Program-made: the position numbers and the translations under genes
Shown: in pieces, positions 37,779 to 64,000 of the stretch
Layout of the letters: the number at the start of each line of letters is the position of its first letter
How positions within the stretch are numbered: the stretch's first letter is position 1
Assembly (NCBI GenBank): GCA_965235115.1
Contig: OZ249447.1
Coordinates: 15,004,001-15,068,000 of the forward strand
DNA length: 64,000 bases
Reading direction: 5' to 3'
Origin: Laetmonice hystrix
Taxonomy: Eukaryota
The notes under the pieces: model-generated
Seen by the model: only the letters and a program-made list of their open reading frames with translations
Database searches by the model: none
Told to the model about the DNA's origin: nothing

Positions 37779-38057
37779 CTACAACATACAAAAGGAGAAT
37801 AACTTACGGAAATGTCAACTGTCCATATTTTTTTAATGATTGAGGGCACTGAAGTTTGGACGGGAAACAGCGTTGGGTATAAACCGGGCATGGGCAAGAA
37901 CAAAGATAAAAAATGATAGGATTCAATAATTTATTTTTTTACATATGTACAGTGTGCATAAATAATATTTACATCATCCAATTGCTTGGCATACAAAGCA
38001 CCGATGCAATGAGAGACTTCACAAGTTCGTATTCACACGCGGCCATAAGTTCAGGCT

Positions 38058-39134
38058 CTAATCTCTGGACTTCCTGGAGCCGGCAAACAGGATGGACTCG
38101 GACGACACGGTTCTCAGGCGCTGACGGTGGGCGGTGATCTCCTTGAAGGCCTTGGTGTTGCCCACCCTCTTGCGCTTGTTGGCGAACCACTTCTTGACCT
38201 GTTCCGAGGTGATGTCTCCTGCCTTGGCCATCACTTCAGCAGTGGACGGGCTCGGGTACGGGTGGTCCTCATTACGTTTGTACCACAGGTTCATGATCTT
38301 GACGGCGGTCGGGTTGAGGGCGGCGGACTTCCTCTTACGGGCCAGGACCTTCTGTGTTCCTGTTAGGGTCTGGGTCAAGTCCTCCAGGTCGGCACCGCTG
38401 CGTTCCTCTGGGCGTCTTTGGTGGCAGGAGAAGAGAAGGTGAAGGCTGCTCTCGACACGACTGACAAGGTGGTGCTGGAGGAGGTCGTAGTAACCATGGA
38501 TATTCTGGGACAACCACGGAGTGCTGACGGACTGATGGAGGCTCTTGTTGCGGTCCGTCTCGATCAGCGACGTCTGGTGGTCGTAGAAGTTGCGGAGCTG
38601 GTCCAGTTGTGACCTGTCGCCGACGGTTGATGCTGCACGGAGGAAGTTGTTGTGGAGACTGGGGGCACGGACCTGGAAGGACTCTGGGAAGGTGGTCGGG
38701 GTCGACATCAAGGTGAACGGTAGAGACGCCTGGTGACACTCGCTGTGGATAGCAATCTGTAGGTCCGGGAACATTGGGTGGGCGGCGATTCGCTGTACCT
38801 CAGGGTTGACGGAGTCAGGGATCTGGTAACTGTAGACATCCTGGATTCTGGTCTCAGTGTGGACGACGTCTGGTGGGAGTGGAGACAGAGGGCGGTACTG
38901 CAAGTGGAAGGACACGATGAGCACAAATATCGGAGAAATAATTTGGTCAATCCGCCAGACAAGTATATTGAACTCTTACTAACTCTAACTACACACTTCA
39001 AAATACATCAAGCTCTCTATAAGGAGATGAAGGGGTATTCGAGCCCCATAGCTTACCAAGGTCATAGGGTCAGGAAGATGAGTATCTTCTACCGTGAGGT
39101 CAAGGGTCAGGGCAGCGGGGCGTTTAGAAGTCAT
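38058..39134 (-). CDS. Divergent PBX-like TALE homeobox gene, type A copy 1 (2 exons, 305 aa)
   Basis: Exon 1 39057-39134 (MTSKRPAALTLDLTVEDTHLPDPMTL), intron 38898-39056 (GT-AG), exon 2 38058-38897. Homeodomain RKRKSAALNPTAVKIMNLWYKRNEDHPYPSPSTAEVMAKAGDITSEQVKKWFANKRKR has the TALE PYP loop and WFxNKR. Confidence 0.9.
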
Positions 39135-39955
39135 GGTGGACGTTGCCGAGTAGCTTGATAAGTCGCTTGATTCTGGAGATGTTGATAGCTCGAGTCTCGG
39201 ATGAGGTTTGGCTGACTCCTCTAGCTGGGCCTGTATATATACCGTCCCACCCCTCGGCTGGGGCTGAGTGCCGGGGCTGAGACCATCTTTGAGCTGCCCC
39301 TCGGTTCACACCTCGGCCCTTTGACCTATTGTGGGCCTCAGGAAGGGCGGCTTACTCGCTAACCTGTTTGAAGCCCACTTCAAAAGGAAGGTGTGACTCT
39401 CAGGTCCCAGTTTGCTCTTTCTCAAAAAGGGAGGTGTGAATGAGGTGTAAGCAGGCTTTGCAAACAATACTTTCCCGGATTGTGAACAACATCCGAATAT
39501 TACCTTACGCTCCGTTTATCTCTTATTTTTATTGTCGTATATTACGCGGACAATACACGGACAAGACATACCTTTTTGCTATAAATAATGTTTGATGTAA
39601 CGAAAATAAGGCCTCCTGTCTCCAGGAGACATAGTTTCTGTAACCAGCATGCTCTGCAGTAGATTATGCCATTCATAACTTTACATAATAACAGGGATTG
39701 AATTAAAAGGTTCTAAATGTTTTACACTGAAGTTGTTTTATGAAGATGCCCGTAAGGCATATAGCGGTAAGACTATTAACATTTCTACCAAAACGCGCGT
39801 ATAACCACTAAAACACAATCATTATCCCTAGCTCCAACCCTAACCCCCTAGATCTGACTATCAGATCTCCTCCAACCCCCCAACCCCCCGCCCTAAGTTT
39901 GTGTTCCCAATGGGGATCAGCCGATAAGCACGCAGCACAAAGTCGGAAGAGAAAA

Positions 39956-41169
39956 GGGATACCCCAGGGGAGCGTTTTAGGACCTCTGCTGTATCTACTA
40001 TATGTCAATGATATCATGGACTGCGATACTGCATCAGATTTAAACATGTTTGCAGATGACACAGCGATGGTGGCCCATGGAAGGGACCTGGAAGAAGTCA
40101 CGGCACAGATCAAGGACGACATGACCAAGCTGACAGGATGGTTTAACGCTAACAAACTAACAGTAAATCTCAACAAAACAAAATGTATGTTTTTCAGCAA
40201 GAATGTTCACAAGGACCATGAACTACCTGGCATAGAAGCGAATGGTGTTCAACTAAACTTTGTACATCAATATTCATACCTGGGTGTAACTCTGGACGAC
40301 AAACTACAGTTCAATGAGCATATAAGGAATAGTATTAAGAAAGCAGGTAATAAGGTGTACATGTTAGCAAAGATAAGACAGTTCATCAACACCCAGACAG
40401 CTCTTACCGTATTTAAAGCTATGATACTGCCCTATATAGAGTATGGAAACATCTTTCACGGGACATGTAATGAGGCCTACCAACAGAAGCTACAAGTCAT
40501 TCAAAATAATGGTTTAAAAATAGCGCTGAAAAGGGACATTTTATACAGAACGGTCGACCTACACATAGAAGCTAAGATCATACCTTGTAAATACAGAAGA
40601 CTTGTGATGTTACAAAAACGTATAAAGAGGTCAAGGAGGGTCAGGCACCACTGAACCGCAGAAACATCAGAACAAGAACTCATGAGGCAGCAACACTTGT
40701 CGTGCCATTTCCTAAGTCAGAATTATTTAAGAAATCTAACGCATACAGTAAAACTGTAAATTGGAATGCTTTACCCCCTTATCTAAGAAACTTAGGTGAG
40801 TATAACCGGTTCAAGCAAGAGATAAAAAATTATTATACCAGTATGTTCCTAACAGATAACAATCGTGGCAAGAATTGCTAATAGGGAAATTCAGGCAGAG
40901 TATAAAATTAGTAACATTTAAGTCTATCACTGCGCAGTTGTTATTACCCGAAAATATTTATGTGTCAAGTTGTTCACACTCTGCATTATATGATTACGGC
41001 TTGCTTGGTGAATTACTAAAATAATACTATGACTGTATGTATATTATGTATATATGTCATGTCTGTAGATACTGTACATATTCAAAACAGGACCCCACAT
41101 TTGTTACGGCATCCAGCCGAGTGGGAACTCCTGGGTAAAGATGTCAATAAAAAAAAAAAAAAAAAAAAA
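39956..41169 (+). mobile_element. 5'-truncated non-LTR retrotransposon (CR1/L2/Jockey-like LINE): RT C-terminus, 3' UTR and polyA tail
   Basis: GIPQGSVLGPLLYLLYVND...MFADDT...YLGVTLDDKLQF; after a frameshift near 40620-40650 it continues ...FKKSNAYSKTVNWNALPPYLR...FKQEIK to stop 40879-40881; AATAAA merging into an A-run at 41146-41169. Confidence 0.9.
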
Positions 41170-41559: not shown

Positions 41560-41860
41560 TGCTTTTGAAGTGGGGTTCAAAAGGCTCCACACTCGAGACG
41601 CCCTCGTTTAAGTGGTACTCAACATACTTGTAACGGTAACACCTCATTCACATGCACCGTCCTATTCTAGGAGGAGCAAACTGGGACCTGAGAGTCACAC
41701 CTTCCTTTTGAAGTGGGCTTCAAACAGGTTGGCGAGTAAGCCGCCCTTCCTGAGGCCACAATAGGTCAAAGGGCCGAGGTGTGAACCGAGGGGCAGCTCA
41801 AAGATGGTCTCAGCCCCGGCACTCAGCCCCAGCCAAGGGGTGGGACGGTATATATACAGG
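41560..41860 (+). promoter_or_regulatory. Type-A promoter: T-box half-sites, TTTGAAG palindromes and TATA (mirrored at ~39230-39450 for copy A1)
   Basis: TAACACCT 41637, TCACACCT 41695, AGGTGTGA 41777, TTTTGAAGTGGGGTTCAAAA 41563-41582, CTTTTGAAGTGGGCTTCAAA ~41705, TATATATA 41849-41856; ATG at 41956. Confidence 0.6.
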
Positions 41861-41955
41861 CCCAGCTAGAGGAGTCAGCCAAACCTCATCCGAGACTCGA
41901 GCTATCAACATCTCCGGAATCAAGCGACTTATCAAGCTACTCGGCAACGTCCACC

Positions 41956-43015
41956 ATGACTTCTAAACGCCCTACTGCCCTGACCCTTGACCTCACGGTA
42001 GAAGATACTCATCTTCCTGACCCTATGACCTTGGTAAGCTATGGGGCTCGAATACTCCCTTCATGTCCTCATTGAGAGATTCAAGTGTAAGAGTTCAATA
42101 TATACTTGAAATCAGTCTGACGGATTGACCAAATTATTTCTCTTTATATTTGTGTTCATCGTGTTCTTCTGCTTGCAGTACCGCCCTCTGTCTCCACTGT
42201 CACCAAACGTCGTCCACACTGAGACCAGAAACCAGGATGTCTACAGTTACCAGATCCCTGACTCCGTCAACCCTGAGGTACAGCGAATCGCCGCCCACCC
42301 AATGTTCCCGGACCTACAGACTGCTATCCATAGCGAGTGTCACCAGGCGTCTCTACCGTTCACCTTGATGTCGACCCCGACCACCTTCCCAGAGTCCTTC
42401 CAGGTCCGTGCCGCCAGCCTACACAACAACTTCCTCCGTGCAGCATCAACCGTCGGCGACAGGTCACAACTGGATCAGCTTCGCAACTTCTACGACCACC
42501 AGACGTCGCTGATCGAGACGGACCGAAGCAAAAGCCTCCATCAGTCCGTCAGCACTCCGTGGTTGTCTCAGAATATCCATGGTTACTACGACCTCCTCCA
42601 GCACCACCTTGTCAGCCGTGTAGAGAGCAGCCTCCACCTATTCTCCTGCCACCAAAGACGCCCAGAGGAACGCAGCGGTGCCGACCTGGAGGACCTGACC
42701 CAGACCCTAACAGGAACACAGAAGGTCCTGGCCCGTAAGAGAAAGTCCGCCGCCCTCAACCCGACCGCCGTCAAGATCATGAACCTCTGGTACAAACGTA
42801 ACGAGGACCACCCGTACCCGAGCCCGTCCACGGCTGAAGTGATGGCCAAGGCAGGAGACATCACCTCGGAACAGGTCAAGAAGTGGTTCGCCAACAAGCG
42901 CAAGAGGATGGGCAACACCAAGGCCTTCAAGGAGATCACCGCCCAACGTCAGCGCCTAAGAACCGTGTCGTCCGAGTCAATCCTGCTTGCCGGCTCCAGG
43001 AAGTCCAGAGATTAG
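41956..43015 (+). CDS. Divergent PBX-like TALE homeobox gene, type A copy 2 (2 exons, 304 aa)
   Basis: Exon 1 41956-42033, intron 42034-42178 (GT-AG, phase 0), exon 2 42179-43015; near-identical inverted copy of A1; CCACCATG start context. Confidence 0.9.
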
Positions 43016-43244
43016 AGAGACCCTCATCATGAACTTTGTAACCACCGGTGCTGCTTGTGTGATCATGTATAGAAACTTGTATATACTATCTACATTATGT
43101 AAATACTACCAACGAATAAATTATTCTATTCCTCACATTTACTTCTTGTTATTACTCCCCTCCCCTGCACGTACCCACCGTAACTGTACTATATCGTCAT
43201 GCCAGAACCCCCAAGGTAAAAACCATAGAAAATTGATAGCAAAA

Positions 43245-43760
43245 AGGTCTCACAAACCAGTCGGGTGCGACTCTCTCTCTCTCTCTTTATCTATGTGATG
43301 TACCTCTCAGCATGAGAGGGGTTACCCTGCATGTTACCCTACATGCAGTAAGATGTTAACAACAACAAGTACGATCTGAGCCTCTCACTTTAAAGTAAGC
43401 TCCAACAGCCAGGAATGTATTACCGACTCTGTCCTGTGTGACTCTACCACCTAGTGAGGTGTTAGATTTCCTTTTGAAGTAGGGTCTCACAAAGCAGGAA
43501 GGTGTCACATTGTCCCTTTGAAGTTAGCTCTATCATCCAGTAAGGTGTTACCGCGTCACTTTATCATCCAGTAAGGTGTGAAGTTACCATTTGAAGTAGA
43601 GTCTCACCAACCGGTAAGGTGTGACTCAGTTCTTTTGATGTTACTGTTTTTCAAAGAACAATGTGTTACAAGCTCAGCGCTTTTATCTGAGATCAAACTG
43701 CAGCTCAAAGAGAGCCAATAAAATTATGCGTTGTTACGCCAGTATCAGTATAAATAGAGG
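43245..43760 (+). promoter_or_regulatory. Type-B promoter/enhancer of B1 (AGGTGTNA and TTTGAAGT motif array, CCAAT, TATAAATA 43749-43756)
   Basis: Repeated motifs read directly; this is a diverged version of the B2-B5 promoters. Confidence 0.65.
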
Positions 43761-43844
43761 CTCTCATTGGGTGAGCAGGTCATACCATCCTTACTGCTCA
43801 CCGTGACCACATCAAGCTCTCATCCACAAAACGACACCGTTAAG

Positions 43845-44657
43845 ATGGCGACCACTGAGCTGACTTTCCACGACCTTCTCGACATGCTGCCCTTACCCTG
43901 CAGTAGTCCATGCCCTCAGCCTCCAGACAGTCCCCTGTCTCAGCACCAGCACACCGACGCTAACCCGACCTTCCACGATCTACAGACTGCCATCCACAGT
44001 GCCTGCCAACAGACGTCTCTCCCGTTCACCCTGATGTCCACCCCGGCCACCTTCCCAGTGCCCTTCCAGATCCGAGCCGCCAGCCTTCAGACCAGGTTCA
44101 CTACGGAACTCACAGTCACTGACAGTCCAGAGCTGGGCCAGCTTCGTGTCTTCTACGACCAGCAGGTGTCCCACATCGAGATGGAGCGCAACCACAGTCT
44201 ACAGCTGTCCGCCAAGTTACCATGGTTGTTCTTCACCATCAACAGTTACTACGACAACCTCCAGCATCAGCTTGTCAGCCGCGTCGAGAGCAGCCTCAAC
44301 TTCCTCTTTTCCTACCGCCAGCAGCCATACCAACCCAAGGCCAGCCAACATGTCTCTACACCTTGCAAGCAAAAGGTTCCGGTCAGGAAGCCCAAGTCCC
44401 CTTCCCTCAACCCGACTGCGGTCAAGATCATGAGCCTGTGGTACAAACGTAACCAAGCCCACCCGTACCCATCCCAGTCGGCAACTGAAGTGATGGCCAA
44501 GACAGGAGGGATCCGAGCTGAGCAGGTCAGGAAATGGTTCGCCAACAAGCGCAAGAGATCTGGATACACCAAGAAGTTCGACGTCTCCGGCAAGCCCCGC
44601 TGCAGCACAACTGTACCGAGTGATCATCTACTGCTCACCACAGCCACCCGGGAGTGA
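43845..44657 (+). CDS. Divergent PBX-like TALE homeobox gene, type B copy 1 (intronless, 270 aa)
   Basis: AAGATGG start 96 nt after TATA; homeodomain RKPKSPSLNPTAVKIMSLWYKRNQAHPYPSQSATEVMAKTGGIRAEQVRKWFANKRKR; AATAAA at 44812. Confidence 0.9.
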   Translation: MATTELTFHDLLDMLPLPCSSPCPQPPDSPLSQHQHTDANPTFHDLQTAIHSACQQTSLPFTLMSTPATFPVPFQIRAASLQTRFTTELTVTDSPELGQLRVFYDQQVSHIEMERNHSLQLSAKLPWLFFTINSYYDNLQHQLVSRVESSLNFLFSYRQQPYQPKASQHVSTPCKQKVPVRKPKSPSLNPTAVKIMSLWYKRNQAHPYPSQSATEVMAKTGGIRAEQVRKWFANKRKRSGYTKKFDVSGKPRCSTTVPSDHLLLTTATRE

Positions 44658-45654
44658 ACACGTCTGCTTTATGGGCATGAACTGGCGATTGCTGTAATTT
44701 ACCATGACTGTCTATAATGTGTAAAAATGTGTAATTTACATGTATTATATGTATTATATCTTGTACATGTATCACCAAGGTGCAATATCAGATGTATATA
44801 CTGTACATAGCAATAAAATAAAAATCCATTCTAATTTACATCCTCTGGTCGATCTGTTCCTGTATATTTTCAATTTTCATTTCGTTGTTTTTCCTCGACA
44901 ACCTATCATTCGTTATTTAAAATTTACAATCTCAAAAAATCCTTTCAAGTCATATATTACTCGTCAATCACGATTTATATTCAGATTGCTCGTAATCTTC
45001 CTGAAGGCGAAAAGGAGTTCTTCGTAGCGCCATCTGTTGGTTACAGATTTTCAAACTTTGAGCAGAATAGAGGCACGTTCAAAGCGCCACCTAGTGAAAT
45101 CATTCCAAGACCAACTCAATAATTTTTATGGTTTCAGCGGGTCAAAAATCAACTTTTAATTTTCCTTTGAAATTTTTCTATTACTCTTTTCACCAAGGTC
45201 CAAGAGAGTTATAATATATTAATATACACGTATTTCTTGTCCCAGTTACCCACGATGCTATCTCAGCTATATATGTGTATAACGTACGTTTCATGTTTTT
45301 TATCATAATAAATACTGGTCATATCCCAAAGAAGTCTCCCGAGTTGGTCCTCTGACAAAGTGTCTCTTCGTCTTGAACTCGTCCCCTGGTCAAGTCAGCA
45401 GCACCGAATCCTATTCTCGGTTGGTTACGGACAACATATTCTTCATGTGCAGTTATCAGTGCCCTTCTGGGGGTTCTTGAAGATAATGTATTAACACCAC
45501 CTGGTGACTACTTTGAACACTTCATTCTCCCGTCTTCCCCCTTTCCGACCGCATGCTGTGTTGACAAATGACCAATTTTTTCCATCGAATAGAAATCCCT
45601 TAGAAGTTTTCTCTATCAACACTGCCCTGTAACACTCTGCCACGAAACAACGTG

Positions 45655-46215
45655 TTAAGTTTCCTTTTGTTGTAGGCTCTCACAAACCAATCGGGTGCGA
45701 CTCTCTCTCTCTCTGTGATGTACCTCTCAGCATGAGAGGTGTTACCGACTCTGTCTTAATGACTCTTATAATGTAGTACGGTGTTAATGTACCTTTTGAA
45801 GTAAGACCTCAACAACAAGTAAGATCTGAGCCTCTCACTTTGAAGTCAGGCTCTAATAGCCAGGAATGTGTGACCGACTCTGTCCTGTGTGACTCTACCT
45901 CCTAGTAGGTGTTAGATTTCCTTTTGAAGTAGGGTCTCACAAAGCAGGAAGGTGTCACATTGTCCCTTTGAAGTTAGCTCTATCATCCAGTAAGGTGTTA
46001 CCGCGTCACTTTATTATCCAGTAAGGTGTCAAGTTACCATTTGAAGTAGAGTCTCACCAACCGGTAAGGTGTGACTCAGTTCTTTTGATGTTACTGTTTT
46101 TCAAAGAACAATGTGTTACAAGCTTAGCGCTTTTATCTGAGATCAAAGTGCAGCTCAAAGAGAGCCAATCAAGGTATGCCTTGCGCACCTCCCGCCAGTA
46201 TCAGTATAAATAGAG
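45655..46215 (+). promoter_or_regulatory. Type-B promoter, short form (B2)
   Basis: Same motif array; TATAAATA 46205-46212. Confidence 0.65.
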
Positions 46216-48880
46216 GCCCTCATTCAGCGAGCAGGTCATACCATCCTTACTGCTCACCGTGACCACATCAAGCTCTCATCCACAAAACGACACCGTGAAG
46301 ATGGCGACCACTGAGCTGACTTTCCACGACTTTCTCGACATGCTGCCCTAACCCTGCAGTAGTCCATGCCCTCAGCCTCCAGACAGTCCCCTGTCTCAGC
46401 ACCAGCACACCGACGCTAACCCGACCTTCCACGATCTACAGACTGCCGTCAACAGTGCCTGCCAACAGACGTCTCTCCCGTTCCCATTGATGTCCACCCC
46501 AGCCACCTTCCCAGTGCCCTTCCAGATCCGAGCCGCCAGCCTTCAGACCAGGTTCACTACGGCACTCACAGTCACTGACAGTCCAGAGCTGGGCCAGCTT
46601 CGTGTCTTCTACGACCAGCAGGTGTCCCACATCGAGATGGAGCGCAACCACAGTCTACAGCTGTCCGCCAAGTTACCATGGTTGTTCTTCACCATCAACA
46701 GTTACTACGACAACCTCCAGCATCAGCTTGTCAGCCGCGTCGAGAGCAGCCTCAACCTCCTCTTCTCCTACCGCCAGCAGTCCGACCAACCCAAGGCCAG
46801 CCAACATGTCTCTACACCTTGCAAGCACAAGGTCCCGGTCAGGAAGCCCAAGTCTCCTTCCCTCAACCCGACTGCTGTCAAGATCATGAGCCTGTGGTAC
46901 AAGCGTAACCATAACAGTTTCGGAGGAAACTGATTGTTAATAAATACGCGATACTTACCTCATAACATATAAGAGACTTACAGTTTCTCGATTCCCAATG
47001 GTCAAAAAATTTAATAAAAGTGTTCTAAGTGAAACAAGAATGAGTTCCACCAGAACTCCTGTCTATCTAACATATTCGGTGTATGGCTCCCTCTAGCGGA
47101 GATCCGCTGGATCGTGCGCCCCCTAGTGTCCATGTGACCTAGTAGTCAGATTTAAATGACCACTAAGCGGGGAGGCGGGAAGGGCCTTTAATGTTATGAG
47201 GTAAGTATCGCGTATTTATTAACAATCAGTTTCCTCCGAAACTGTTATGGTTAATTACATACGCTTCTACTTACCTCATAACATATGAGAGCGAGTGCTA
47301 AGCATAGGAGGTGGGAAGACAGAAATATTCACTCCACAGCCATACCCATTGAGGCGTAGGCCCATGCACTTGTTTTCACCTGGGAACGTTTATAGCGTTA
47401 AATCCTGAAAACTGCTATACGTGTGTAGGGAAGGTAATACCTGCTCCTTGTGAGGGAACCAAGGGCCGGAAGACTGAACAGATAACATCTGCCCCCCCCC
47501 CTTCTTTTTGTCCCACGCTCTCCATCATGCAGTGACGTGGACAAACAACGGCCTGGACCACTATGAGGTGGCCCAGACTAAAAGGGCGTCCTCCTGACCA
47601 CCAGGTTCACGCAATAAGACTGTAAAGGTGGTGTCTGATAGCCAAAAGGCAGCCTCGAGGAATTCGGCGAAGGTTACTCCATTAATAGGAGCCAAGGACG
47701 CAGAAATCGCCCGCACCTCAAGAACCTTAACACGATGAAACTGTAAAGACTTGGACAAGGCCGCGTCTGCCCGAGTCAAGGCTATAAGCTAAAGCCTTCC
47801 ACCTTCCACAATTGTAGCGGGCGTGATGTCGAGGGGTACGCACTCACCAAAGACACGACACCCCCTCTAACAGGCAGCTCTACAGGCGCTCCTCATCATC
47901 CGGCCTGAGCTCGGAGCTCAGAGCCAGGGTCGGGTTGTTAGCCACAGATTGTGGTAACAAAGGTCACAATGGAGGAACAGGGGCCAAAACGCGCTCCCCC
48001 GAAGGCAGTAAATTCCGACCACCTCAGCCCTGAGGTTAATGCTACAGGAACATGGTCTTTCAAGTACAACTTGGTGTACGGAAGACATAAGATAAATAAG
48101 GGGGGACGCAACAATGCGTTCAGTACCACCGACCAACTCCAGTAAGGGGCCTTCCTCGGCTTTACGGGCTCAAGAAATATCAAATTGCGTAATAGCGCAC
48201 TGAGTTCCCGTCAAGAGCTAAAGGAACCTCCGCCTGGTGCTGATGCATTTGCTGCAATCACTGATCTGATTCCTCGCACGGCGGAGACCGACAACCCCCG
48301 AAGAAACCTGTCAAGCAGACAATCGGCTACTGACAGGGGGCGGTGAGATCAAAGTCATATGTTCCCCTGCCCATTCAATAAGGAAGGCCCGCTGTCTCGA
48401 TACGCAGCTTGCGAGGAGGGCCTATGTTTCTCGGCCATGCTCTGGGCCGCTTGTCCCGAGAATCCACGCTTCTCACCTCTGTTCCTGACAAGCAGAGGGG
48501 TGTAAATCGAAAATCTTCGGAGCTGAATGCCACTTCCCTCTCTAAAACAACAGATCGGGGTCATAAGGCAGGGATCGAGCCCAATCCCGCAACAATTCTG
48601 ATATCTCTGTGAAACAAGGCCAACCCGGCCCATATTATGACTGGCCCAGACAGGCGCGTTTCGCGGCGCGTTCGAGACGCGTCGGCCATTTTCATGCACG
48701 CCTCTTGACGCACGCACGCACGCACGCCCCTGTGTGTCCCCGGCTTTAAACTTGCCCTGCACATGAAATGACGCACAACGTCACTCGGTGCTGGCGACAC
48801 CACCAGAGGATGTCCCCGGTTATCCGGAATAGTAGCAGTGACCGAGTGTCCCTTTGATTTAACAGATAGGTCACTGCCAT

Positions 48881-49043
48881 CCCAACTAACACACAACCTT
48901 TTCACAACGTTGAATAAAGTTGTAGTTTGGTCACTTCACAACGTTGTGTCTAACGAAACTACAACGTTGTGGCAACATAGAAGACCAAACAAATTTACGT
49001 AGCGTTATGGGAACGTTGTAGCAACGTAATATTGCTAGCGGGG
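48881..49043. mobile_element. Small CACTA/EnSpm-like MITE nested in the DIRS element
   Basis: Imperfect termini CCCAACTAACA / TGCTAGCGGGG, AT on both flanks, internal CAACGTTG repeats. Confidence 0.45.
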
Positions 49044-51958: not shown

Positions 51959-52350
51959 GCGCGGCTGGCCCGGGTGGTCTCCTCGAGGAGACCACCGGAC
52001 GCAGACGAGGGGGAGAACGGTCGCTCGAGCTCTGGCTCGAGGCGAACGCGAGTCTCCCCTCGCGTCAAGAGATCGATCCCGAGCCGACTCGCGCGGCTGG
52101 CCCGGGTGGCCTCCTCGAGGAGACCACCGGACGCAGACGAGGGGGAGAACGGTTGCTCGAGCTCTGGCTCGAGGCGAACGCGAGTCTCCCCTCGCGTCAA
52201 GAGATGGATCTAGGGCTCGCGCGGCTCGCGCGGCTGGCCCGGGTGGCCTCCTCGAGGAGACCCCCGGACGCAGACGAGGGGGAGAACGGTCGCTCGAGCT
52301 CTGGCTCGAGGCGAACTCGAGTCTCCCCTCGCGTCAAGAGATCGATCCAG
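51959..52350. repeat. Three ~132-137-bp tandem repeats in the DIRS gag-like region
   Basis: Units start at 51959, 52091 and 52228 (GCGCGGCTGGCCCGGGTGG...GCGTCAAGAGAT). Confidence 0.9.
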
Positions 52351-54394: not shown

Positions 54395-55085
54395 TGTTAA
54401 GTTTCCTTTTGTTGTAGGCTCTCACAAACCAATCGGGTGCGACTCTCTCTCTCTGTGATGTACCTCTCAGCATGAGAGGTGTTACCGACTCTGTCTTAAT
54501 GACTCTTATAATGTAGTACGGTGTTAATGTACCTTTTGAAGTAAGACCTCAACAACAAGTAAGATCTGAGCCTCTCACTTTGAAGTCAGGCTCTAATAGC
54601 CAGGAATGTGTGACCGACTCTGTCCTGTGTGACTCTACCACCTAGTGAGGTGTTAGATTTCTTTTTGAAGTAGGGTCTCACCAACCAGTAAGGTGTCCCT
54701 TTGTCCCTTTGAAGTTAGCCCTATCATCCAGTAAGGTGCTACCGACTCTGTCCTGTGTGACTCTACCACCTAGTGAGGTGTTAGATTTCCCTTTGAAGTA
54801 GGGTCTCACAAAGCAGGAAGGTGTCACATTGTCTCTTTGAAGTTAGCTCTATCATCCAGTAAGGTGTTACCGCGTCACTTTACTATCCAGTAAGGTGTCA
54901 AGTTACCATTTGAAGTAGAGTCTCGCCAACCGGTAAGGTGTGACTCAGTTCTTTTGATGTTACTGTTTTTCAAAGAACAATGTGTTACAAGCTCAGCGCT
55001 TTTATCTGAGATCAAAGTGCAGCTCGAAGAGAGCCAATCAAGGTATGCCTTGCGCACCTCCCGCCAGTATCAGTATAAATAGAGG
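54395..55085 (+). promoter_or_regulatory. Type-B promoter, long form with internal ~128-bp duplication (B3)
   Basis: ACCGACTCTGTCCTGTG...CCAGTAAGGTG block present twice; TATAAATA 55074-55081. Confidence 0.65.
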
Positions 55086-55169
55086 CCCTCATTCAGCGAG
55101 CAGGTCATACCATCCTTACTGCTCACCGTGACCACATCAAGCTCTCATCCACAAAACGACACCGTGAAG

Positions 55170-55997
55170 ATGGCGACCACTGAGCTGACTTTCCACGACC
55201 TTCTCGACATGCTGCCCTTAGCCTGCAGCAGTCCATGCCCTCAGCCTCCAGACAGTCCCCTGTCTCAGCACCTGCACACCGACGCTAACCCGACCTTCCA
55301 CGATCTTCAGACTGCCATCCGCAGTGCCTGCCAACAGACGTCTCTCCCGTTCACCCTGATGTCCACCCCGGCCACCTTCCCAGTGCCCTTCCAGATCCGA
55401 GCCGCCAGCCTTCAGACCAGGTTCACTACGGCACTCACAGTCACTGACAGTCCAGAGCTGGGCCAGCTTCGTGTCTTCTACGACCAGCAGGTGTCCCACA
55501 TCGAGATGGAGCGCAACCACAGTCTACAGCTGTCCGCCAAGTTACCATGGTTGTTCTTCACCATCAACAGTTACTACGACAACCTCCAGCATCAACTTGT
55601 CAGCCGCGTCGAGAGCAGCCTCAACTTCCTCTTTTCCTACCGCCAGCAGCCATACCAACCCAAGGCCAGCCAACATGTCTCTACACCTTGCAAGCAAAAG
55701 GTTCCGGTCAGGAAGCCCAAGTCCCCTTCCCTCAACCCGACTGCGGTCAAGATCATGAGCCTGTGGTACAAACGTAACCAAGCCCACCCGTACCCATCCC
55801 AGTCGGCAACTGAAGTGATGGCCAAGACAGGAGGGATCCGAGCTGAGCAGGTCAGGAAATGGTTCGCCAACAAGCGCAAGAGATCTGGATACACCAAGAA
55901 GTTCGACGTCTCCGGCAAGCCCCGCTGCAGCACAACTGTACCGAGTGATCCTCACCACAGCCACCCGGGAGTGAACACGTCTGGTTTATGGGCATGA
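55170..55997 (+). CDS. TALE homeobox type B copy 3 (275 aa; C-terminal tail frameshifted after the homeodomain)
   Basis: Homeodomain intact; an 8-nt deletion (ATCTACTG) between 55950 and 55951 changes the tail to PHHSHPGVNTSGLWA*. Confidence 0.85.
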   Translation: MATTELTFHDLLDMLPLACSSPCPQPPDSPLSQHLHTDANPTFHDLQTAIRSACQQTSLPFTLMSTPATFPVPFQIRAASLQTRFTTALTVTDSPELGQLRVFYDQQVSHIEMERNHSLQLSAKLPWLFFTINSYYDNLQHQLVSRVESSLNFLFSYRQQPYQPKASQHVSTPCKQKVPVRKPKSPSLNPTAVKIMSLWYKRNQAHPYPSQSATEVMAKTGGIRAEQVRKWFANKRKRSGYTKKFDVSGKPRCSTTVPSDPHHSHPGVNTSGLWA

Positions 55998-56975
55998 ACT
56001 GGCGATTGCTGTAATTTACCATGACTGTCTATAATGTGTAAAAATGTGTAATTTACATGTATTATATGTATTATATCTTGTACATGTATCACCAAGGTGC
56101 TATATCAGATGTATATACTGTACATAGCAATAAAATAAAAATCCATTCTAATTTACATCCTCTGGTCGATCTGTTCCTGTATATTTTCAATTTTCATTTC
56201 GTTGTTTTTCCTCGACAACCTATCATTCGTTATTTAAAATTTACAATCTCAAAAAATCCTTTCAAGTCATATATTACTCGTCAATCACGATTTATATTCA
56301 GATTGCTCGTAATCTTCCTGAAGGCGAAAAGGAGTTCTTCGTAGCGCCATCTGTTGGTTACAGATTTTCAAACTTTGAGCAGAATAGAGGCATGTTCAAA
56401 GCGCCACCTAGTGAAATCATTCCAAGACCAACTCAATAATTTTTATGGTTTCAGCGGGTCAAAAATCAACTTTTAATTTTCCTTTGAAATTTTTCTAATA
56501 CTCTTTTCACCAAGGTCCAAGAGAGTTATAATATATTAATATACACGTATTTCTTGTCCCAGTTACCCACGATGCTATCTCAGCTATATATGTGTATAAC
56601 GTACGTTTCATGTTTTTTATCATAATAAATACTGGTCATATCCCAAAGAAGTCTCCCGAGTTGGTCCTCTGACAAAGTGTCTCTTCGTCTTGAACTCGTC
56701 CCCTGGTCAAGTCAGCAGCACCGAATCCTATTCTCGGTTGGTTACGGACAACATATTCTTCATGTGCAGTTATCAGTGCCCTTCTGGGGGTTCTTGAAGA
56801 TAATGTATTAACACCACCTGGTGACTACTTTGAACACTTCATTCTCCCGTCTTCCCCCTTTCCGACCGCATGCTGTGTTGACAAATGACCAATTTTTTCC
56901 ATCGAATAGAAATCCCTTAGAAGTTTTCTCTATCAACACTGCCCTGTAACACTCTGCCACGAAACAACGTGTTAA

Positions 56976-58092
56976 AGCGATCCGAAACCTCCACAAGCAA
57001 TAGGGCCCATGGATAACCATGGTATAGTGCCTTTTACCTGCCACCATCTAATTCCCACAAAGTCTGTGTGTTAAAAGTAATCCCCGATAGAAACTGACAG
57101 TTGACCGTTTGCCTACTGCGGCCATTTTGCACCAGACACTGCTGTGAGACCTTAAGAAAATGGCGTGCCTAGAGCCTACCCCATTCCCAATCACTGTGTT
57201 GGTCAACCATCTTCACCGACACTATGTACAATAATGGTTACTGGTGAACTCGGACCATGGTTATCTCGGACCATGTCGATTACATGACTTCATGTCCCCT
57301 TCATGCGTGCCCTGTCCCAGGCTCCATGCCTCACTCACCCCGACACCCGAGTCAGGTGGTCAAGTCAACAACGGGGCAGCACGGTGCTCCCGACGGGCGT
57401 GCACTGGTGGTTGGACGGGGCCAGACATGCCAATTTGGTCGATCGACAACATAGTGAAAAATCTCTTACCGGGCGCTTAAACGAACAGAAACTCGTCGCA
57501 ATACCCTCCAACGCAGGAAATGATGGCTGAAAGCTATTATTTATACGGAGAATTGTCAACTGGGGAATGAAATGTACACTGGTCGGGTCATGGATGGAGT
57601 CTGACACAGTAGTGACAGACTACGCGGCAGTCTACGGCCGGGGACATGGCGTGCACTGGAGCCTCGGGCTACCGTTCAGCACACCCAGGCATATCTTCAC
57701 GAAGTATCAGCACCAAGTCAGTGGTGTGGTTAGACCTGCTGATCGGTCTCCTAGTACTATGACACGGATAATCTTACTCGCAGCTCTCAGTCTAGACTCT
57801 GACTACCTTGTTTCCTCACCCGATCTGACAGCTGGTCGAAACTCGCGGCTCTGGCGACGTCACACTTCCGGGTGACCTGACTGTTTTTGATTGGCTGAAT
57901 CAATCTCCCATGTGATAATGTGATGTAAAATGGCGCCGAGTTCATTTCTCGGCTAGAGGTACGGTACTCGTAGTTTAAGGTTGGCATTCTCGTTTATGTG
58001 AAACCTATTGACCTGCATTTATTGCTGATGTTATTCTTTATTGTATAAGGCATATGGGAAGGTATAAGGTAGCTGGATTGTTGCATTTGGCT
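56976..58092. mobile_element. 1.1-kb non-coding insertion with TTAA target duplication (Kolobok- or piggyBac-like non-autonomous element)
   Basis: Other units read GTGTTAAGTTTCC; here TTAA is duplicated at 56972-56975 and 58093-58096. The ends AGC.../...GCT fit a Kolobok-like RR start better than the piggyBac CC start; TIRs are poor. Confidence 0.75.
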
Positions 58093-58655
58093 TTAAGTTT
58101 CCTTTTGTTGTAGGCTCTCACAAACCAATCGGGTGCGACTCTCTCTCTCTGTGATGTACCTCTCAGCATGAGAGGTGTTACCGACTCTGTCTTAATGACT
58201 CTTATAATGTAGTACGGTGTTAATGTACCTTTTGAAGTAAGACCTCAACAACAAGTAAGATCTGAGCCTCTCACTTTGAAGTCAGGCTCTAATAGCCAGG
58301 AATGTGTGACCGACTCTGTCCTGTGTGACTCTACCTCCTAGTAGGTGTTAGATTTCCTTTTGAAGTAGGGTCTCACAAAGCAGGAAGGTGTCACATTGTC
58401 CCTTTGAAGTTAGCTCTATCATCCAGTAAGGTGTTACCGCGTCACTTTATTATCCAGTAAGGTGTCAAGTTACCATTTGAAGTAGAGTCTCACCAACCGG
58501 TAAGGTGTGACTCAGTTCTTTTGATGTTACTGTTTTTCAAAGAACAATGTGTTACAAGCTCAGCGCTTTTATCTGAGATCAAAGTGCAGCTCAAAGAGAG
58601 CCAATCAAGGTATGCCTTGCACACCTCCCGCCAGTATCAGTATAAATAGAGGCCC
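58093..58655 (+). promoter_or_regulatory. Type-B promoter, short form (B4)
   Basis: 6 AGGTGT and 5 TTTGAAGT counted by eye, plus TTCAAAG, AGATCAAAG, CCAAT and TATAAATA 58641-58648. Confidence 0.65.
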
Positions 58656-58736
58656 TCATTCAGCGAGCAGGTCATACCATCCTTACTGCTCACCGTGACC
58701 ACATCAAGCTCTCATCCACAAAACGACACCGTGAAG

Positions 58737-59549
58737 ATGGCGACCACTGAGCTGACTTTCCACGACTTTCTCGACATGCTGCCCTTACCCTGCAGTAGTC
58801 CATGCCCTCAGCCTCCAGACAGTCCCCTGTCTCAGCACCAGCACACCGACGCTAACCCGACCTTCCACGATCTACAGACTGCCGTCAACAGTGCCTGCCA
58901 ACAGACGTCTCTCCCGTTCACCCTGATGTCCACCCCAGCCAGCTTCCCAGTGCCCTTCCAGATCCGAGCTGCCAGCCTTCAGACTAGGTTCACTACGGCA
59001 CTCACAGTCACTGACAGTCCAGAGCTGGGCCAGCTTCGTGTCTTCTACGACCAGCAGGTGTCCCACATCGAGATGGAGCGCAACCACAGTCTACAGCTGT
59101 CCGCCAAGTTACCATGGTTGTTCTTCACCATCAACAGTTACTACGACAACCTCCAGCATCAGCTTGTCAGCCGCGTCGAGAGCAGCCTCAACCTCCTCTT
59201 CTCCTACCGCCAGCAGCCAGACCAGCCCAAGGCCAGCCAACATGTCTCCACACCTTGCAAGCAAAAGGTTCCGGTCAGGAAGCCCAAGTCTCCTTCCCTC
59301 AACCCGACTGCTGTCAAGATCATGAGCCTGTGGTACAAGCGTAACCAAGCCCACCCGTACCCATCCCAGTCGGCAACTGAAGTGATGGCCAAGACAGGAG
59401 GGATCCGAGCTGAGCAGGTCAGGAAGTGGTTCGCCAACAAGCGCAAGAGATCTGGATACACCAAGAAGTTCGACGTCTCTGGCAAGCCCCGCTGCAGCAC
59501 AACTGTGCCGAGTGACCATCTACTGCTCACCACATCCAGCCGGGAGTGA
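58737..59549 (+). CDS. TALE homeobox type B copy 4 (intronless, 270 aa)
   Basis: Intact ORF nearly identical to B1; same homeodomain. Confidence 0.9.
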   Translation: MATTELTFHDFLDMLPLPCSSPCPQPPDSPLSQHQHTDANPTFHDLQTAVNSACQQTSLPFTLMSTPASFPVPFQIRAASLQTRFTTALTVTDSPELGQLRVFYDQQVSHIEMERNHSLQLSAKLPWLFFTINSYYDNLQHQLVSRVESSLNLLFSYRQQPDQPKASQHVSTPCKQKVPVRKPKSPSLNPTAVKIMSLWYKRNQAHPYPSQSATEVMAKTGGIRAEQVRKWFANKRKRSGYTKKFDVSGKPRCSTTVPSDHLLLTTSSRE

Positions 59550-60559
59550 ACACGTCTGTTTTATGGGCATGAACTGGCGATTGCTGTGATTTACCATTAC
59601 TGTCTATAATGTGTAAAAATGTGTAATCTACATGTATTATATGTATTATATCTTGTACATGTATCACCAAGGTGCTATATCAGATGTATATACTGTACAT
59701 AGCAATAAAATAAAAATCCATTCTAATTTACATCCCCTGGTCGATATATTCGTGTATATTTTCAATTTTCCTTTAGTTGTTTTTCCTCGACAACCTATCA
59801 TTCGTTATTTAAAATTTACAATCTCAAAACATCCTTTCAAGTCAAATATTACTCGTCAATCACGATTGATATTCAGAGGATTGCTCGTAATCTTTCTGAA
59901 GGCGAAAAGGAGTTCTTCGTAGCGCCACCTGTTGGTTACAGATTTTCAAACTTTGAGCAGAATAGAGGCACGTTCAAAGCGCAACCTAGTGGAATCATTC
60001 CAAGACCAACTCAATAATTTTGATAGTTTCAGCAGGTCAAAAATTAACTTTTAATTTTCCTTTGAAATTTTTCTATTAGGCCCCTACTCTTTTTACCTAG
60101 GTCCAAAAGAGTTATAATATATTAATAATATACACGTATTTCCTGTCCCAGTTACCCACGATGCTATCTCAGCTATATGGTGTATAACGTACGTTTCATG
60201 TTTTTTATCATAATAAATACTGGTCATATCCCAAAGAAGTCTCCCGAGTTGGCCCTCTGACAAAGTGTCTCTTCGTCTTGAACTCGTCCCCTGGTCAAGT
60301 CAGCAGCACCGAATCCTATTCTCGGTTGGTTACGGACAACATAATCTTCATGTGCAGTTATCAGTGCCCTCTGGGGGTTCTTGAAGATACTGTATTAACA
60401 CCACCTGGTGACTACTTTGAACACTTCATTCTCCCGTCTTCCCCCTTTCCGACCGCATGCTGTGTTGACTAATGACCAATTTTTTCCATCGAATAGAAAT
60501 CCCTTAGAAGTTTTCTCTATCAACACTGCCCTGTAAGACTCTGCCACGAAACAACGTGT

Positions 60560-61245
60560 TAAGTTTCCTTTTGTTGTAGGCTCTCACAAACCAATCGGGT
60601 GCGACTCTCTCTCTCTGTGATGTACCTCTCAGCATGAGAGGTGTTACCGACTCTGTCTTCATGGCTCTTATAATGTAGTACGGTGTTAATGTACCTTTTG
60701 AAGTAAGACCTCAACAACAAGTAAGATCTGAGCCTCTCACTTTGAAGTCAGGCTCTAATAGCCAGGAATGTGTGACCGACTCTGTCCTGTGTGACTCTAC
60801 CACCTAGTGAGGTGTTAGATTTCTTTTTGAAGTAGGGTCTCACCAACCAGTAAGGTGTCCCTTTGTCCCTTTGAAGTTAGCCCTATCATCCAGTAAGGTG
60901 CTACCGACTCTGTCCTGTGTGACTCTACCACCTAGTGAGGTGTTAGATTTCCCTTTGAAGTAGGGTCTCACAAAGCAGGAAGGTGTCACATTGTCCCTTT
61001 GAAGTTAGCTCTATCATCCAGTAAGGTGTTACCGCGTCACTTTATTATCCAGTAAGGTGTCAAGTTACCATTTGAAGTAGAGTCTCACCAACCGGTAAGG
61101 TGTGACTCAGTTCTTTTGATGTTACTGTTTTTCAAAGAACAATGTGTTACAAGCTCAGCGCTTTTATCTGAGATCAAAGTGCAGCTCAAAGAGAGCCAAT
61201 CAAGGTATGCCTTGCGCACCTCCCGCCAGTATCAGTATAAATAGA
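60560..61245 (+). promoter_or_regulatory. Type-B promoter, long form (B5)
   Basis: 8 AGGTGT and 7 TTTGAAGT counted by eye; duplication period 128 bp (60775 vs 60903); TATAAATA 61236-61243. Confidence 0.65.
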
Positions 61246-61331
61246 GGCCCTCATTCAGCGAGCAGGTCATACCATCCTTACTGCTCACCGTGACCACATC
61301 AAGCTCTCATCCACAAAACGACACCGTGAAG

Positions 61332-62144
61332 ATGGCGACCACTGAGCTGACTTTCCACGACTTTCTCGACATGCTGCCCTTACCCTGCAGTAGTCCATGC
61401 CCTCAGCCTCCAGACAGTCCCCTGTCTCAGCACCACCATACCGACGCTAACCCGACCTTCCACGATCTACAGACTGCCGTCAACAGTGCCTGCCAGCAGA
61501 CGTCTCTCCCGTTCACCCTGATGTCCACCCCGGCCACCTTCCCAGTGCCCTTCCAGATCCGAGCCGCCAGCCTTCAGACCAGGTTCACTACGGCACTCAC
61601 AGTCACTGACAGTCCAGAGCTGGGCCAGCTTCGTGTCTTCTACGACCAGCAGGTGTCCCACATCGAGATGGAGCGCAACCACAGTCTACAGCTGTCCGCC
61701 AAGTTACCATGGTTGTTCTTCACCATCAACAGTTACTACGACAACCTCCAGCATCAGCTTGTCAGCCGCGTCGAGAGCAGCCTCAACCTCCTCTTCTCCT
61801 ACCGCCAGCAGTCGGACCAACCCAAGGCCAGCCAACATGTCTCCACACCTTGCAAGCACAAGGTCCCGGTCAGGAAGCCCAAGTCTCCTTCCCTCAACCC
61901 GACTGCTGTCAAGATCATGAGCCTGTGGTACAAGCGTAACCAAGCCCACCCGTACCCATCCCAGTCGGCAACTGAAGTGATGGCCAAGACAGGAGGGATC
62001 CGAGCTGAGCAGGTCAGGAAGTGGTTCGCCAACAAGCGCAAGAGATCTGGATACACCAAGAAGTTCGACGTCTCCGGCAAGCCCCGCTGCAGCACAACTG
62101 TACCGAGTGATCATCTACTGCTCACCACAGCCGCCCGCGACTGA
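61332..62144 (+). CDS. TALE homeobox type B copy 5 (intronless, 270 aa)
   Basis: Intact ORF; same homeodomain. Confidence 0.9.
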   Translation: MATTELTFHDFLDMLPLPCSSPCPQPPDSPLSQHHHTDANPTFHDLQTAVNSACQQTSLPFTLMSTPATFPVPFQIRAASLQTRFTTALTVTDSPELGQLRVFYDQQVSHIEMERNHSLQLSAKLPWLFFTINSYYDNLQHQLVSRVESSLNLLFSYRQQSDQPKASQHVSTPCKHKVPVRKPKSPSLNPTAVKIMSLWYKRNQAHPYPSQSATEVMAKTGGIRAEQVRKWFANKRKRSGYTKKFDVSGKPRCSTTVPSDHLLLTTAARD

Positions 62145-63242
62145 ACACGTCTGCTTTATGGGCATGAACTGGCGATTGCTGTGATTTACCATGACTGTCT
62201 ATAATGTGTAAAAATGTGTAATCTACATGTATTATATGTATTATATCTTGTACATGTATCACCAAGGTGCTATATCAGATGTATATACTGTACATAGCAA
62301 TAAAATAAAAATCCATTCTAATTTACATCCTCTGGTCGATCTATTCCTGTATATTTTTAATTTTCCTTTAGTTGTTTTTCCTCGACAACCTATCATTCGT
62401 TATTTAAAATTTACAATCTCAAAAAATCCTTTCAAGTCAAATATTACTCGTCAATCACGATTTATATTCAGAGGATTGCTCGTAATCTTTCTGAAGGCGA
62501 AAAGGAGTTCTTCGTAGCGCCACCTGTTGGTTACAGATTTTCAAACTTTGAGCAGAATAGAGGCACGTTCAAAGCGCAACCTAGTGGAATCATTCCAAGA
62601 CCAACTCAATAATTTTGATAGTTTCAGCAGGTCAAAAATTAACTTTTAATTTTCCTTTGAAATTTTTCTATTAGGCCCCTACTCTTTTTACCTAGGTCCA
62701 AAAGAGTTATAATATATTAATAATATACACGTATTTCCTGTCCTAGTTACCCACGATGCTATCTCAGCTATATGGTGTATAACGTACGTTTCATGTTTTT
62801 TATCATAATAAATACTGGTCATATCCCAAAGAAGTCTCCCGAGTTGGTCCTCTGACAAAGTGTCTCTTCGTCTTGAACTCGTCCCCTGGTCAAGTCAGCA
62901 GCACCGAATCCTATTCTCGGTTGGTTACGGACAACATAATCTTCATGTGCAGTTATCAGTGCCCTCTGGGGGTTCTTGAAGATACTGTATTAACACCACC
63001 TGGTGACTACTTTGAACACTTCATTCTCCCGTCTTCCCCCTTTCCGACCGCATGCTGTGTTGACAAATGACCAATTTTTCCCATCGAATAGGAATCCTTT
63101 AGAAGTTTTCTCTATCAACACTGCCCTGTAAGACTCTGCCACGAAACAACGTGTTAAGTTTCCTTTTGTTGTAGGCTCTCACAAACCAATCGGGTGCGAC
63201 TCTCTCTCTCTGTGATGTACCTCTCAGCATGAGAGGTGTTAC

Positions 63243-64000
63243 CATAGAACTGTACTGGAGGGAAGGCCAACTCTCTTTCGTGCCCCAATTATCGCTCAAA
63301 TATGTAGGGTCGTTCGCAGCGCCCCCATGTGGTTATGAGACCGGTGCTTGGGTGCAACGCTCGGCATAGCACGGCGACATTAGGCCTAGACTCTCTTGGA
63401 TTTAAACATCAACTGGATTATGGATAAAGTGTATAGGCAGTGGAGCAGAATGTAGCAAAGGCTTGGAAAAAATCTAGGTGTCCTAGCAAACTCTTAGATA
63501 TTTTAAAATCAATTACCTAGAATTAAAATCGAGAGACCCAATCAGCGACGTCAGGAACAATGCACAATAGCGCTACGTCACAATGGTCATTTGGAATGTG
63601 ATCATAACGGGCCTAAATATTAATGGCGGACGGTGCTTCGCTTCGCCAGTTCAAACGTCTCTAACTGCTAAAATACACAAGGAAGAACGTTGAAACGTGA
63701 CATAAGGGGATAAAATATTGAACCAAACAATGTCACTGACTTAGAATTGTTTAGCAAGGTCCCCCCTTTCTTAATTCAAGCACTGTCATCGCCGGAGATC
63801 GGTGAAGTTTGTGACGTTACAATTTCGTACCCTCGTAATCTGACAGTTTTTTTGGGGTAAATTTTGAAAAGATTAAGTAACAGATGTGAATGCCATATAC
63901 ATTTATAGATCGAGGATTACTCTAAAATCCGGCCTGGATAGATTCTAAAATTATTGTTGTGATTTAGTATTTCTAATGGGCCGTTCTTATTGGGGGTTGA
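63243..64000. mobile_element. Unidentified sequence interrupting the start of a sixth type-B promoter (probable insertion; right end outside the window)
   Basis: The unit sequence runs 63155-63243 (...GAGAGGTGTTACC) and then switches abruptly to unrelated sequence (ATAGAACTGTACTGG...). Confidence 0.45.

What the first reader, a model, noticed from the sequence alone, without database searches (positions are those of the whole stretch)
37779..64000. Homeobox cluster apparently nested in a single giant intron of the CCDC162-like gene
The most 5' host exon found (37604-37778) starts mid-codon after an acceptor AG, so more exons must lie upstream. I found none in the next 26 kb, which holds only homeobox units and transposons. 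A1 ends just 280 bp from this exon on the host's strand, with its own polyA signal at 37930; the other six copies are antisense to the host. A developmental TF array expanding inside an intron of a probably germline/ciliary gene is unusual and raises questions of premature polyadenylation, transcriptional interference and shared chromatin opening.
Basis: partly seen in the sequence, partly recalled or inferred. Interest (0 to 1): 0.78.

Follow-up and report, generated by a model that had tools for sequence, protein, structure and literature searches.

The report
Homeobox gene cluster inside CCDC162 intron
Seven copies of a fast-evolving developmental (TALE homeobox) gene sit upstream of an internal exon of the conserved gene CCDC162, and a sister species shows the same cluster inside that same intron, so this is a real but fairly ordinary case of genes nested within a gene.

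Summary
The minus-strand exon 37604-37778 is a true internal CCDC162 exon, matching residues 1132-1188 of a protein of about 2,270 residues. Its acceptor and split Ser codon (AG|T) are the same in four species. Nothing in 37779-64000 matches the N-terminal 1,131 residues. I tested about 120 orthologues and the upstream exons of a sister species, with positive controls.

The stretch holds seven TALE homeobox units: A1 on the host strand, then A2 and B1-B5 antisense. It also holds a reverse-transcriptase fragment, a 6.3-kb element with inverted terminal repeats that splits B2, and 757 bp of unique DNA.

The nested reading is supported by comparison, not directly. On a 369-kb contig of the closest relative found, three related homeobox genes lie in a 10.8-kb intron at exactly this position. 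Host exons for residues 440-1131 lie on one side and 1132 onward on the other. The sense copy is again next to the acceptor.

In Paralvinella the same intron is about 200 bp, and in Physella about 207 bp. No homeobox match lies in either locus, nor in the compact Lineus and Dimorphilus genes.

The upstream exons of this genome lie beyond the window and were not seen, and no RNA data exist.

This is a new member of a known kind and of moderate interest.

The parts
37604..37778 (-). Host (CCDC162-like) internal exon, residues about 1132-1188 of the orthologues. Acceptor AG at 37780-37779, donor GT at 37603-37602.
   Evidence: homology starts at the acceptor; acceptor and phase are the same in the window, the relative, Physella and Paralvinella
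23580..37388 (-). The remaining host exons, about 20, covering residues about 1189-2255 (C-terminal half). Introns are about 0.1-2.6 kb.
   Evidence: tblastn, colinear; 65-94% aa identity to the relative's exons; dN/dS 0.05
37779..64000 (-). Visible part (26.2 kb) of the host intron between residues 1131 and 1132. It has no host exon, and its upstream end lies beyond the window.
   Evidence: no matches, with controls
38058..38924 (-). A1, main exon of a TALE homeobox gene on the host strand. The ORF starts at a conserved acceptor TTGCAG|TACCG.
37930..37935 (-). AATAAA downstream of A1, about 150 nt upstream of the host acceptor.
38925..39448 (-). A1 upstream region, duplicated with A2. It holds patches conserved in the relative and a TATATATA near 39240. 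Probably the promoter and 5' exon.
39899..40654 (+). Reverse-transcriptase fragment (retroelement remnant) between A1 and A2.
   Evidence: RVT_1, E 2.4e-11
41639..43017 (+). A2 unit (ORF 42125-43015). It is an inverted duplicate of A1 (93.8% over 1.4 kb) and antisense to the host.
43360..63243 (+). Tandem array of five B units of about 2.6 kb, 95-99% alike. ORFs: B1 43767-44657, B2 46487-46911 plus about 53189-53396 (split), B3 55128-55997, B4 58695-59549, B5 61290-62144. All are antisense to the host.
46906..53194 (.). 6.3-kb insertion that splits B2. It has 205-nt terminal inverted repeats (99% complementary) and internal 128-nt tandem repeats. No protein domain was found.
63244..64000 (.). 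Unique sequence beyond the array, with no detectable exon.

Best explanation
A lineage-specific cluster of TALE-class homeobox genes lies inside one intron of an intact CCDC162 gene. This intron separates the codons for residues 1131 and 1132 and is about 200 bp long in the two outgroup loci where I measured it. One or more homeobox genes entered it in the common ancestor of this (probably annelid) species and its sister. The cluster has since grown by inverted duplication (A1/A2), by tandem duplication of a 2.6-kb unit (B1-B5) and by transposon insertion. The intron is 10.8 kb in the sister and more than 26.2 kb here.

The nested genes are probably autonomous units. The A copies have their own conserved upstream motifs, a TATA-like element, a 5' exon and a poly(A) signal. 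The paralogues are under purifying selection.

The host polymerase must read through the whole array, including A1's poly(A) signal 150 nt before the acceptor, and then splice across it. I infer that host and nested genes are used in different cells or stages, which would limit interference.

Shown: the anatomy, the absence of host exons in 26 kb, the conserved intron position and phase, nesting in the sister species, and short homeobox-free introns in outgroups. Inferred: that upstream host exons follow beyond position 64000, that one transcript spans the array, and the expression pattern.
For: Exon identity and boundary.

No host exon in 37779-64000, with controls.

Sister-species contig (ENA ERZ26222911 ctg1020246, 369 kb): host exons for residues 440-1131 at L005:286-10926. 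Then a 10.8-kb gap with three Homeobox_KN genes (L003:2105-2815 minus, 6502-7362 minus, 9803-10687 plus). Then the exon for residues 1132-1188 at L003:11788-11967, and further exons onward. The order and strands match the window: the sense copy is next to the acceptor and antisense copies lie upstream.

Window and relative are sisters (SH-aLRT 100) and group with the annelid Paralvinella (96). Their four-fold sites are saturated at 39% identity, so the arrangement is old.

Host C-terminal exons: 79-81% aa identity and dN/dS 0.05.

Same intron: about 207 bp in Physella and about 202 bp in Paralvinella. No homeobox match in those loci or in the Lineus (17.8 kb) and Dimorphilus (8.8 kb) genes.

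Contigs from three sequencing runs of one sample bridge 36000-38086, from the host exon into the 3' end of A1.

Paralogue dN/dS is 0.18-0.42. The A-type acceptor and upstream motifs are conserved.
Against: The upstream host exons of this genome were not seen. The window ends 757 bp beyond the array, and I found no way to read further.

No RNA run holds the stretch, so no splice junction across the array has been observed in either species.

The sequencing runs laid probably come from the sample that was assembled, so they are not independent support.

The orthology of A with the relative's HB1, and of B with HB2, is unresolved in the tree.
Confidence: 0.85

Rival explanations
1. The host gene is broken in this genome. 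A rearrangement inside the repeat-rich intron (inverted duplication, tandem array, transposons) moved or deleted the N-terminal half. The array would then lie beside a truncated gene, not inside an intron.
For: No upstream exon appears in 26.2 kb. The region holds an inverted duplication and two transposon remnants, which could mediate rearrangement.
Against: All of the 20 or so downstream exons are open and colinear. They are 79-81% identical to the sister's, with dN/dS 0.05. The acceptor and its pyrimidine tract are intact. The sister has the same layout inside an uninterrupted gene. A break would have to be very recent.
Confidence: 0.08
2. Gene fission or an internal promoter. The C-terminal half is transcribed on its own from a start inside or just downstream of the array, for example using the in-frame ATG at 37891-37889. 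The array would then be effectively intergenic, or it would drive a short host isoform as ceh-10 does for polq-1 in C. elegans.
For: The frame is open from an ATG at about 37891 through the acceptor into the exon. Databases hold several C-terminal-half-only CCDC162 models, though these may be partial predictions. Nested genes inducing short host transcripts are documented (PMC12274878).
Against: In the sister species in-frame stops lie 8 codons upstream of the acceptor, so the upstream ORF is not conserved. The acceptor and the AG|T phase are conserved across four species, as expected if splicing to an upstream exon is kept. A short isoform could also coexist with the full-length transcript, so it would not remove the nesting.
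Confidence: 0.05
3. Assembly artefact. The array was wrongly joined to the host gene.
For: Tandem units 95-99% alike are hard to assemble. One contig of one run branches at 37923.
Against: Contigs of all three runs bridge the host exon and the end of A1. The same adjacency exists on an independent 369-kb contig of another species.
Confidence: 0.02

Closest known systems
Opposite-strand nested homeobox gene ceh-10 inside an intron of polq-1 in C. elegans (PMC12274878)
   Same: A homeobox transcription-factor gene lies inside an intron of an unrelated, larger host gene. This raises the same questions of interference or co-activation.
   Different: Here it is a cluster of seven copies in two subfamilies, on both strands, that has expanded in place. 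No expression data exist, so no regulatory coupling has been shown.
Lineage-specific tandem duplications of spiralian TALE (SPILE) homeobox genes, e.g. eight near-identical copies in Lottia and seven on one scaffold in a chiton (PMC8524836; classification in PMC6118893)
   Same: TALE-class homeobox genes restricted to spiralians that evolve fast and duplicate in tandem, giving near-identical copies.
   Different: Those papers do not mention an intronic location (a text search of PMC8524836 found 'intron' and 'nested' 0 times). I did not test whether the copies here belong to a named SPILE clade.
SPILE-D homeobox gene nested in a VPS16 intron of this same genome (earlier scan note s1-330523; not checked by me)
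   Same: A TALE homeobox gene kept inside one intron of a conserved housekeeping-type host gene across related species.
   Different: That is a single copy on the host strand. This is an expanding multi-copy array in a different host gene.
CCDC162 (C6orf183/C6orf184; DUF4549 plus CCDC162_mid) orthologues of other animals
   Same: The window's exons are colinear with residues 1132-2255. The intron position and phase at 1131|1132 are identical.
   Different: In Physella and Paralvinella this intron is about 200 bp. No homeobox match lies anywhere in those loci or in the compact Lineus and Dimorphilus genes.

Membership tests
CCDC162 family (host gene) | Colinear sequence homology to proteins that sources name CCDC162 / CC162 / C6orf183 homolog | tested here: met
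   about 20 exons map in order to residues 1132-2255 at 45-65% identity; the hit list includes proteins named coiled-coil domain containing 162
CCDC162 family (host gene) | Central CCDC162_mid domain (PF28523) | tested here: inconclusive
   Precomputed hits mark PF28523 on the orthologues and on the relative's ORF L003:17067-17309, which matches window 33075-33251. The local Pfam copy did not report this family, and the window exons gave no Pfam hit on their own.
CCDC162 family (host gene) | N-terminal DUF4549 domain (PF15082) | not testable with these tools
   The domain lies at residues 1-150 of the orthologues. That part of the gene is outside the window.
Nested (intronic) gene arrangement | Host exons of one gene, on one strand and phase-compatible, on both sides of the inner genes | tested here: inconclusive
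   In this window only the 3' side is visible. In the sister species both sides lie on one contig with a compatible AG|T phase.
Nested (intronic) gene arrangement | A host transcript that splices across the inner genes | not testable with these tools
   No RNA run holds the stretch.
TALE-class homeobox genes | Homeodomain of the KN/TALE type (Pfam Homeobox_KN above its gathering score) | tested here: met
   41.9-42.0 bits against a cut-off of 24 in the four copies scanned (A1, A2, B1, B4). The motif WFANKRKR and the HPYPS loop are visible in those and in B3 and B5. B2 is split within the homeobox.
SPILE (spiralian TALE) clade | Placement inside the SPILE clade in a homeodomain phylogeny with reference sequences | not tested
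Only four relatives were found among 5.8 billion proteins.

The most novel reading that the evidence does not exclude
The nesting is functional and not just tolerated. The sense copy is held next to the host's 3' splice site in two deeply diverged species. Activation of the array in early embryos may drive a short C-terminal CCDC162 transcript, as in the ceh-10/polq-1 case. Alternatively, host transcription through the array in ciliated or germ cells may set its chromatin state or terminate at A1's poly(A) site, so that array copy number tunes host output.
Probability: 0.1. Interest if true: 0.7.

Novelty: new member of a known kind. Interest (0 to 1): 0.36.

Why it matters
This gives a dated, comparative example of a conserved intron growing more than 100-fold, from about 200 bp to 10.8 kb and then over 26 kb. 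The growth came from capturing a fast-evolving developmental homeobox family and then amplifying it in place. It also offers a natural test bed for interference between a host gene and same-strand or opposite-strand nested genes, and for how spiralian TALE arrays expand. It does not overturn any expectation, because nested genes and TALE tandem expansions are both known.

Tried and rejected
1. Reading beyond the window failed.
- Exact look-ups of B5 with two different starts found no record.
- The homeobox search listed no protein of this genome, so the gene collection appears not to hold it.
- Notes of this scan gave nothing on neighbouring sequence.

2. RNA evidence: no RNA run holds the stretch. 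The one read-laying run therefore went on an assembly check.

3. Pfam on single host exons gave nothing.

4. Exon 37604-37778 as a first exon using the in-frame ATG at about 37891. I rejected this as a conserved feature because the relative has in-frame stops 8 codons upstream of the acceptor.

5. A1 spliced onto the upstream host exon as a fusion or alternative terminal exon. The host donor leaves two bases (AG|), while the A1 ORF starts in phase 0 after TTGCAG|. The homeodomain would be out of frame, so I rejected this by inference.

6. tRNA genes in the array, as in another TALE array of this genome: none found.

7. The Owenia orthologue locus is not on record.

8. Orthology of the A and B types with the relative's three copies stayed unresolved.

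9. Pfam on ORFs of the 6.3-kb insert and the 57-58 kb spacer insert found no domain.

10. I did not search any tool with a joined spliced model of the host. Only single exons were searched, by reference. Pooled exon columns were used only inside scripts, for dN/dS and one tree.
Full report
**What is in the window**

The minus strand of 23580-37780 carries about 20 exons. They map in order to residues 1132-2255 of a 2,265-residue protein of Physella acuta. That protein was found with one window exon as the query. It has the DUF4549 and CCDC162_mid domains. Its relatives include proteins that their sources name coiled-coil domain containing 162, CC162 or C6orf183 homolog. The host is therefore a CCDC162-family gene, and the window holds only its C-terminal half.

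**The 5'-most exon**

Exon 37604-37778 aligns to residues 1132-1188. Similarity starts exactly at SGRPGSPTETKSEK, directly after the AG at 37780-37779. One longer alignment, to Paralvinella, only extends weakly into the intron.

The acceptor has the form pyrimidine tract, TAG, then T GGN/GTA CGN. It is the same in the window, its sister species, Physella and Paralvinella. In the three species where the upstream exon is visible, that exon ends in AG|GT, so the split codon is AGT (Ser).

**No host exon in 37779-64000**

- About 120 orthologues, three of them annelid, give no tblastn match right of 37790 at E<1e-3. At E up to 10 there are only chance hits.
- The most sensitive probe is the sister species' own upstream 11.1 kb with 17 exons. 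It gives 0 tblastx hits in the whole window. Its downstream part hits the matching window exons (residues 1132 to about 1804) at 65-94% identity.
- Frog and fish proteins detect at least 14 N-terminal exons in the Physella locus. The N-terminal half is therefore conserved enough to be found.

**What fills the 26 kb**

- A1 (38058-38924, host strand). Its stop is 280 bp from the host exon, and an AATAAA lies at 37935-37930.
- A reverse-transcriptase fragment at 39899-40654.
- A2 (42125-43015), an inverted 1.4-kb duplicate of A1 at 93.8% identity.
- Five tandem B units of about 2.6 kb, 95-99% alike, spanning 43360-63243.
- A 6.3-kb element that splits B2. It has 205-nt inverted terminal repeats that are 99% complementary. 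No protein domain was found in it.
- 757 bp of unique sequence at the right end of the window.

The four ORFs scanned (A1, A2, B1, B4) match Pfam Homeobox_KN well above its threshold. B3 and B5 show the same homeodomain motifs. There are no tRNA genes in the stretch.

**Is the cluster inside an intron?**

This genome cannot be read beyond position 64000 with the tools given, and no RNA run holds the stretch. The decisive evidence is comparative.

A search with B4 found only four relatives among 5.8 billion proteins. Two of them are 57-58% identical and come from one ENA assembly. One lies on a 369-kb contig. That contig carries, on one strand:

- CCDC162 exons for residues 440-1131, separated by small introns.
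- A 10.8-kb gap holding three Homeobox_KN genes, in the order minus, minus, plus.
- The exon for residues 1132-1188, followed by further exons up to about residue 1804.

The layout mirrors the window. The copy on the host strand lies next to the acceptor, and the antisense copies lie upstream of it.

In a tree of 666 aligned CCDC162 columns, the window and this relative are sisters (SH-aLRT 100). Together they group with the annelid Paralvinella (96). Their host exons are 79-81% identical in protein, with dN/dS about 0.05. Four-fold degenerate sites are saturated at 39% identity. The shared arrangement is therefore old, and the host's C-terminal half is under strong constraint.

**The ancestral state**

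The same intron is about 207 bp in Physella and about 202 bp in Paralvinella. The whole gene spans 17.8 kb in Lineus and 8.8 kb in Dimorphilus. None of the four loci gives any match to the homeobox proteins.

The homeobox genes therefore entered this intron on the branch leading to the window's species and its sister. The array then grew in place.

**Assembly**

Contigs from three sequencing runs of one sample, probably the sample that was assembled, bridge 36000-38086. That stretch runs from the host exon into the 3' end of A1. The independent contig of the sister species shows the same adjacency.

**How it probably works**

The nested genes look autonomous:

- A1, A2 and the sister's sense copy all start their main ORF at a conserved acceptor, TTGCAG|TACCG, so they have a 5' exon.
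- Upstream patches and a TATATATA element are conserved between A1, A2 and, in part, the sister.
- Paralogue pairs have dN/dS of 0.18-0.42.

The host transcript must read through seven genes and A1's poly(A) signal before splicing. I infer, without data, that the host and the nested genes are used in different cells or stages.

**Alternatives**

- A break or truncation of the host gene (0.08).
- A separate C-terminal transcript starting in or beside the array (0.05).
- Misassembly (0.02).

The in-frame ATG upstream of the acceptor is not conserved in the sister. A host-A1 fusion would be out of frame.

**Comparison with what is known**

Nested genes are common. One studied case is a homeobox gene, ceh-10, nested on the opposite strand in polq-1 (PMC12274878). 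Lineage-specific tandem duplications of spiralian TALE genes are published (PMC8524836; PMC6118893).

What is new here is the particular host, the in-place expansion to seven copies, and the growth of the intron by more than 100-fold.

**Method note**

I did not send a joined spliced model of the host to any search tool. Exons were searched singly, by reference. Pooled exon columns were used only inside scripts, for dN/dS and one tree.

Noticed in passing
window 38058-38790: In the contigs of all three runs, words of the A-type coding region have 12-26 times the depth of the flanking unique DNA. They differ from A1 at 3-5% of positions, and their 3' flank is unlike A1's (loose end at 38058). 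This suggests many more A-like homeobox copies elsewhere in the genome. The tool warns that depth is not a copy number.
   Followed up: partly
window 38900-38935, 42140-42180; L003:9800-9830: The A-type homeobox ORFs have no ATG near their start. They begin right after a conserved acceptor, TTGCAG|TACCG, in A1, A2 and the sister's sense copy. A-type genes therefore have a 5' exon and are not intronless. The B-type ORFs have a conserved KMAT... start.
   Followed up: partly
window 39231-39420 and 41668-41860; L003:9251-9420: Upstream patches are conserved between A1, A2 and the sister species (CCTTCCTTTTGAAGT..TTCAAACAGGT and GCTCAAAGATGG.CTCAGCC). In the window a TATATATA follows. This is a probable shared promoter with TCF-like and T-box-like motifs.
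   Followed up: no
A1 vs L003:9818-10687; B4 vs L003:6502-7362: Between the two species, synonymous sites of the homeobox genes are less diverged than those of the host gene around them. Four-fold site identity is 46-55% against 39%, and NG86 dS is 0.8-0.9 against 2.5-3. GC3 is 70-78% in the homeobox genes against 60% in the host. Codon or composition bias may explain it, but this is not settled.
   Followed up: partly
window 37923: One contig of run X3 follows the window from 36000 to 37923 and then continues in unlike sequence for 255 letters. The branch is at A1's poly(A) region. The other two runs bridge the place. It may be an allele with an insertion or an assembly-graph branch.
   Followed up: no
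L002:58943-62280 (Paralvinella); window about 16555-17288: In Paralvinella a DUF3695 gene lies just downstream of CCDC162 on the other strand. If the two genes correspond, this is conserved local synteny. I did not test whether the window's gene has DUF3695.
   Followed up: no
L004 (8.7-kb contig, 18x) vs L003 (32x): The sister's assembly holds a second short contig with the same two homeobox genes. One protein is identical and the other nearly so. It is probably the other haplotype of the same locus.
   Followed up: no
window 56975-58093: A 1.1-kb insert is found only in the spacer between B3 and B4. It has no other copy in the window and no Pfam hit in its ORFs.
   Followed up: partly
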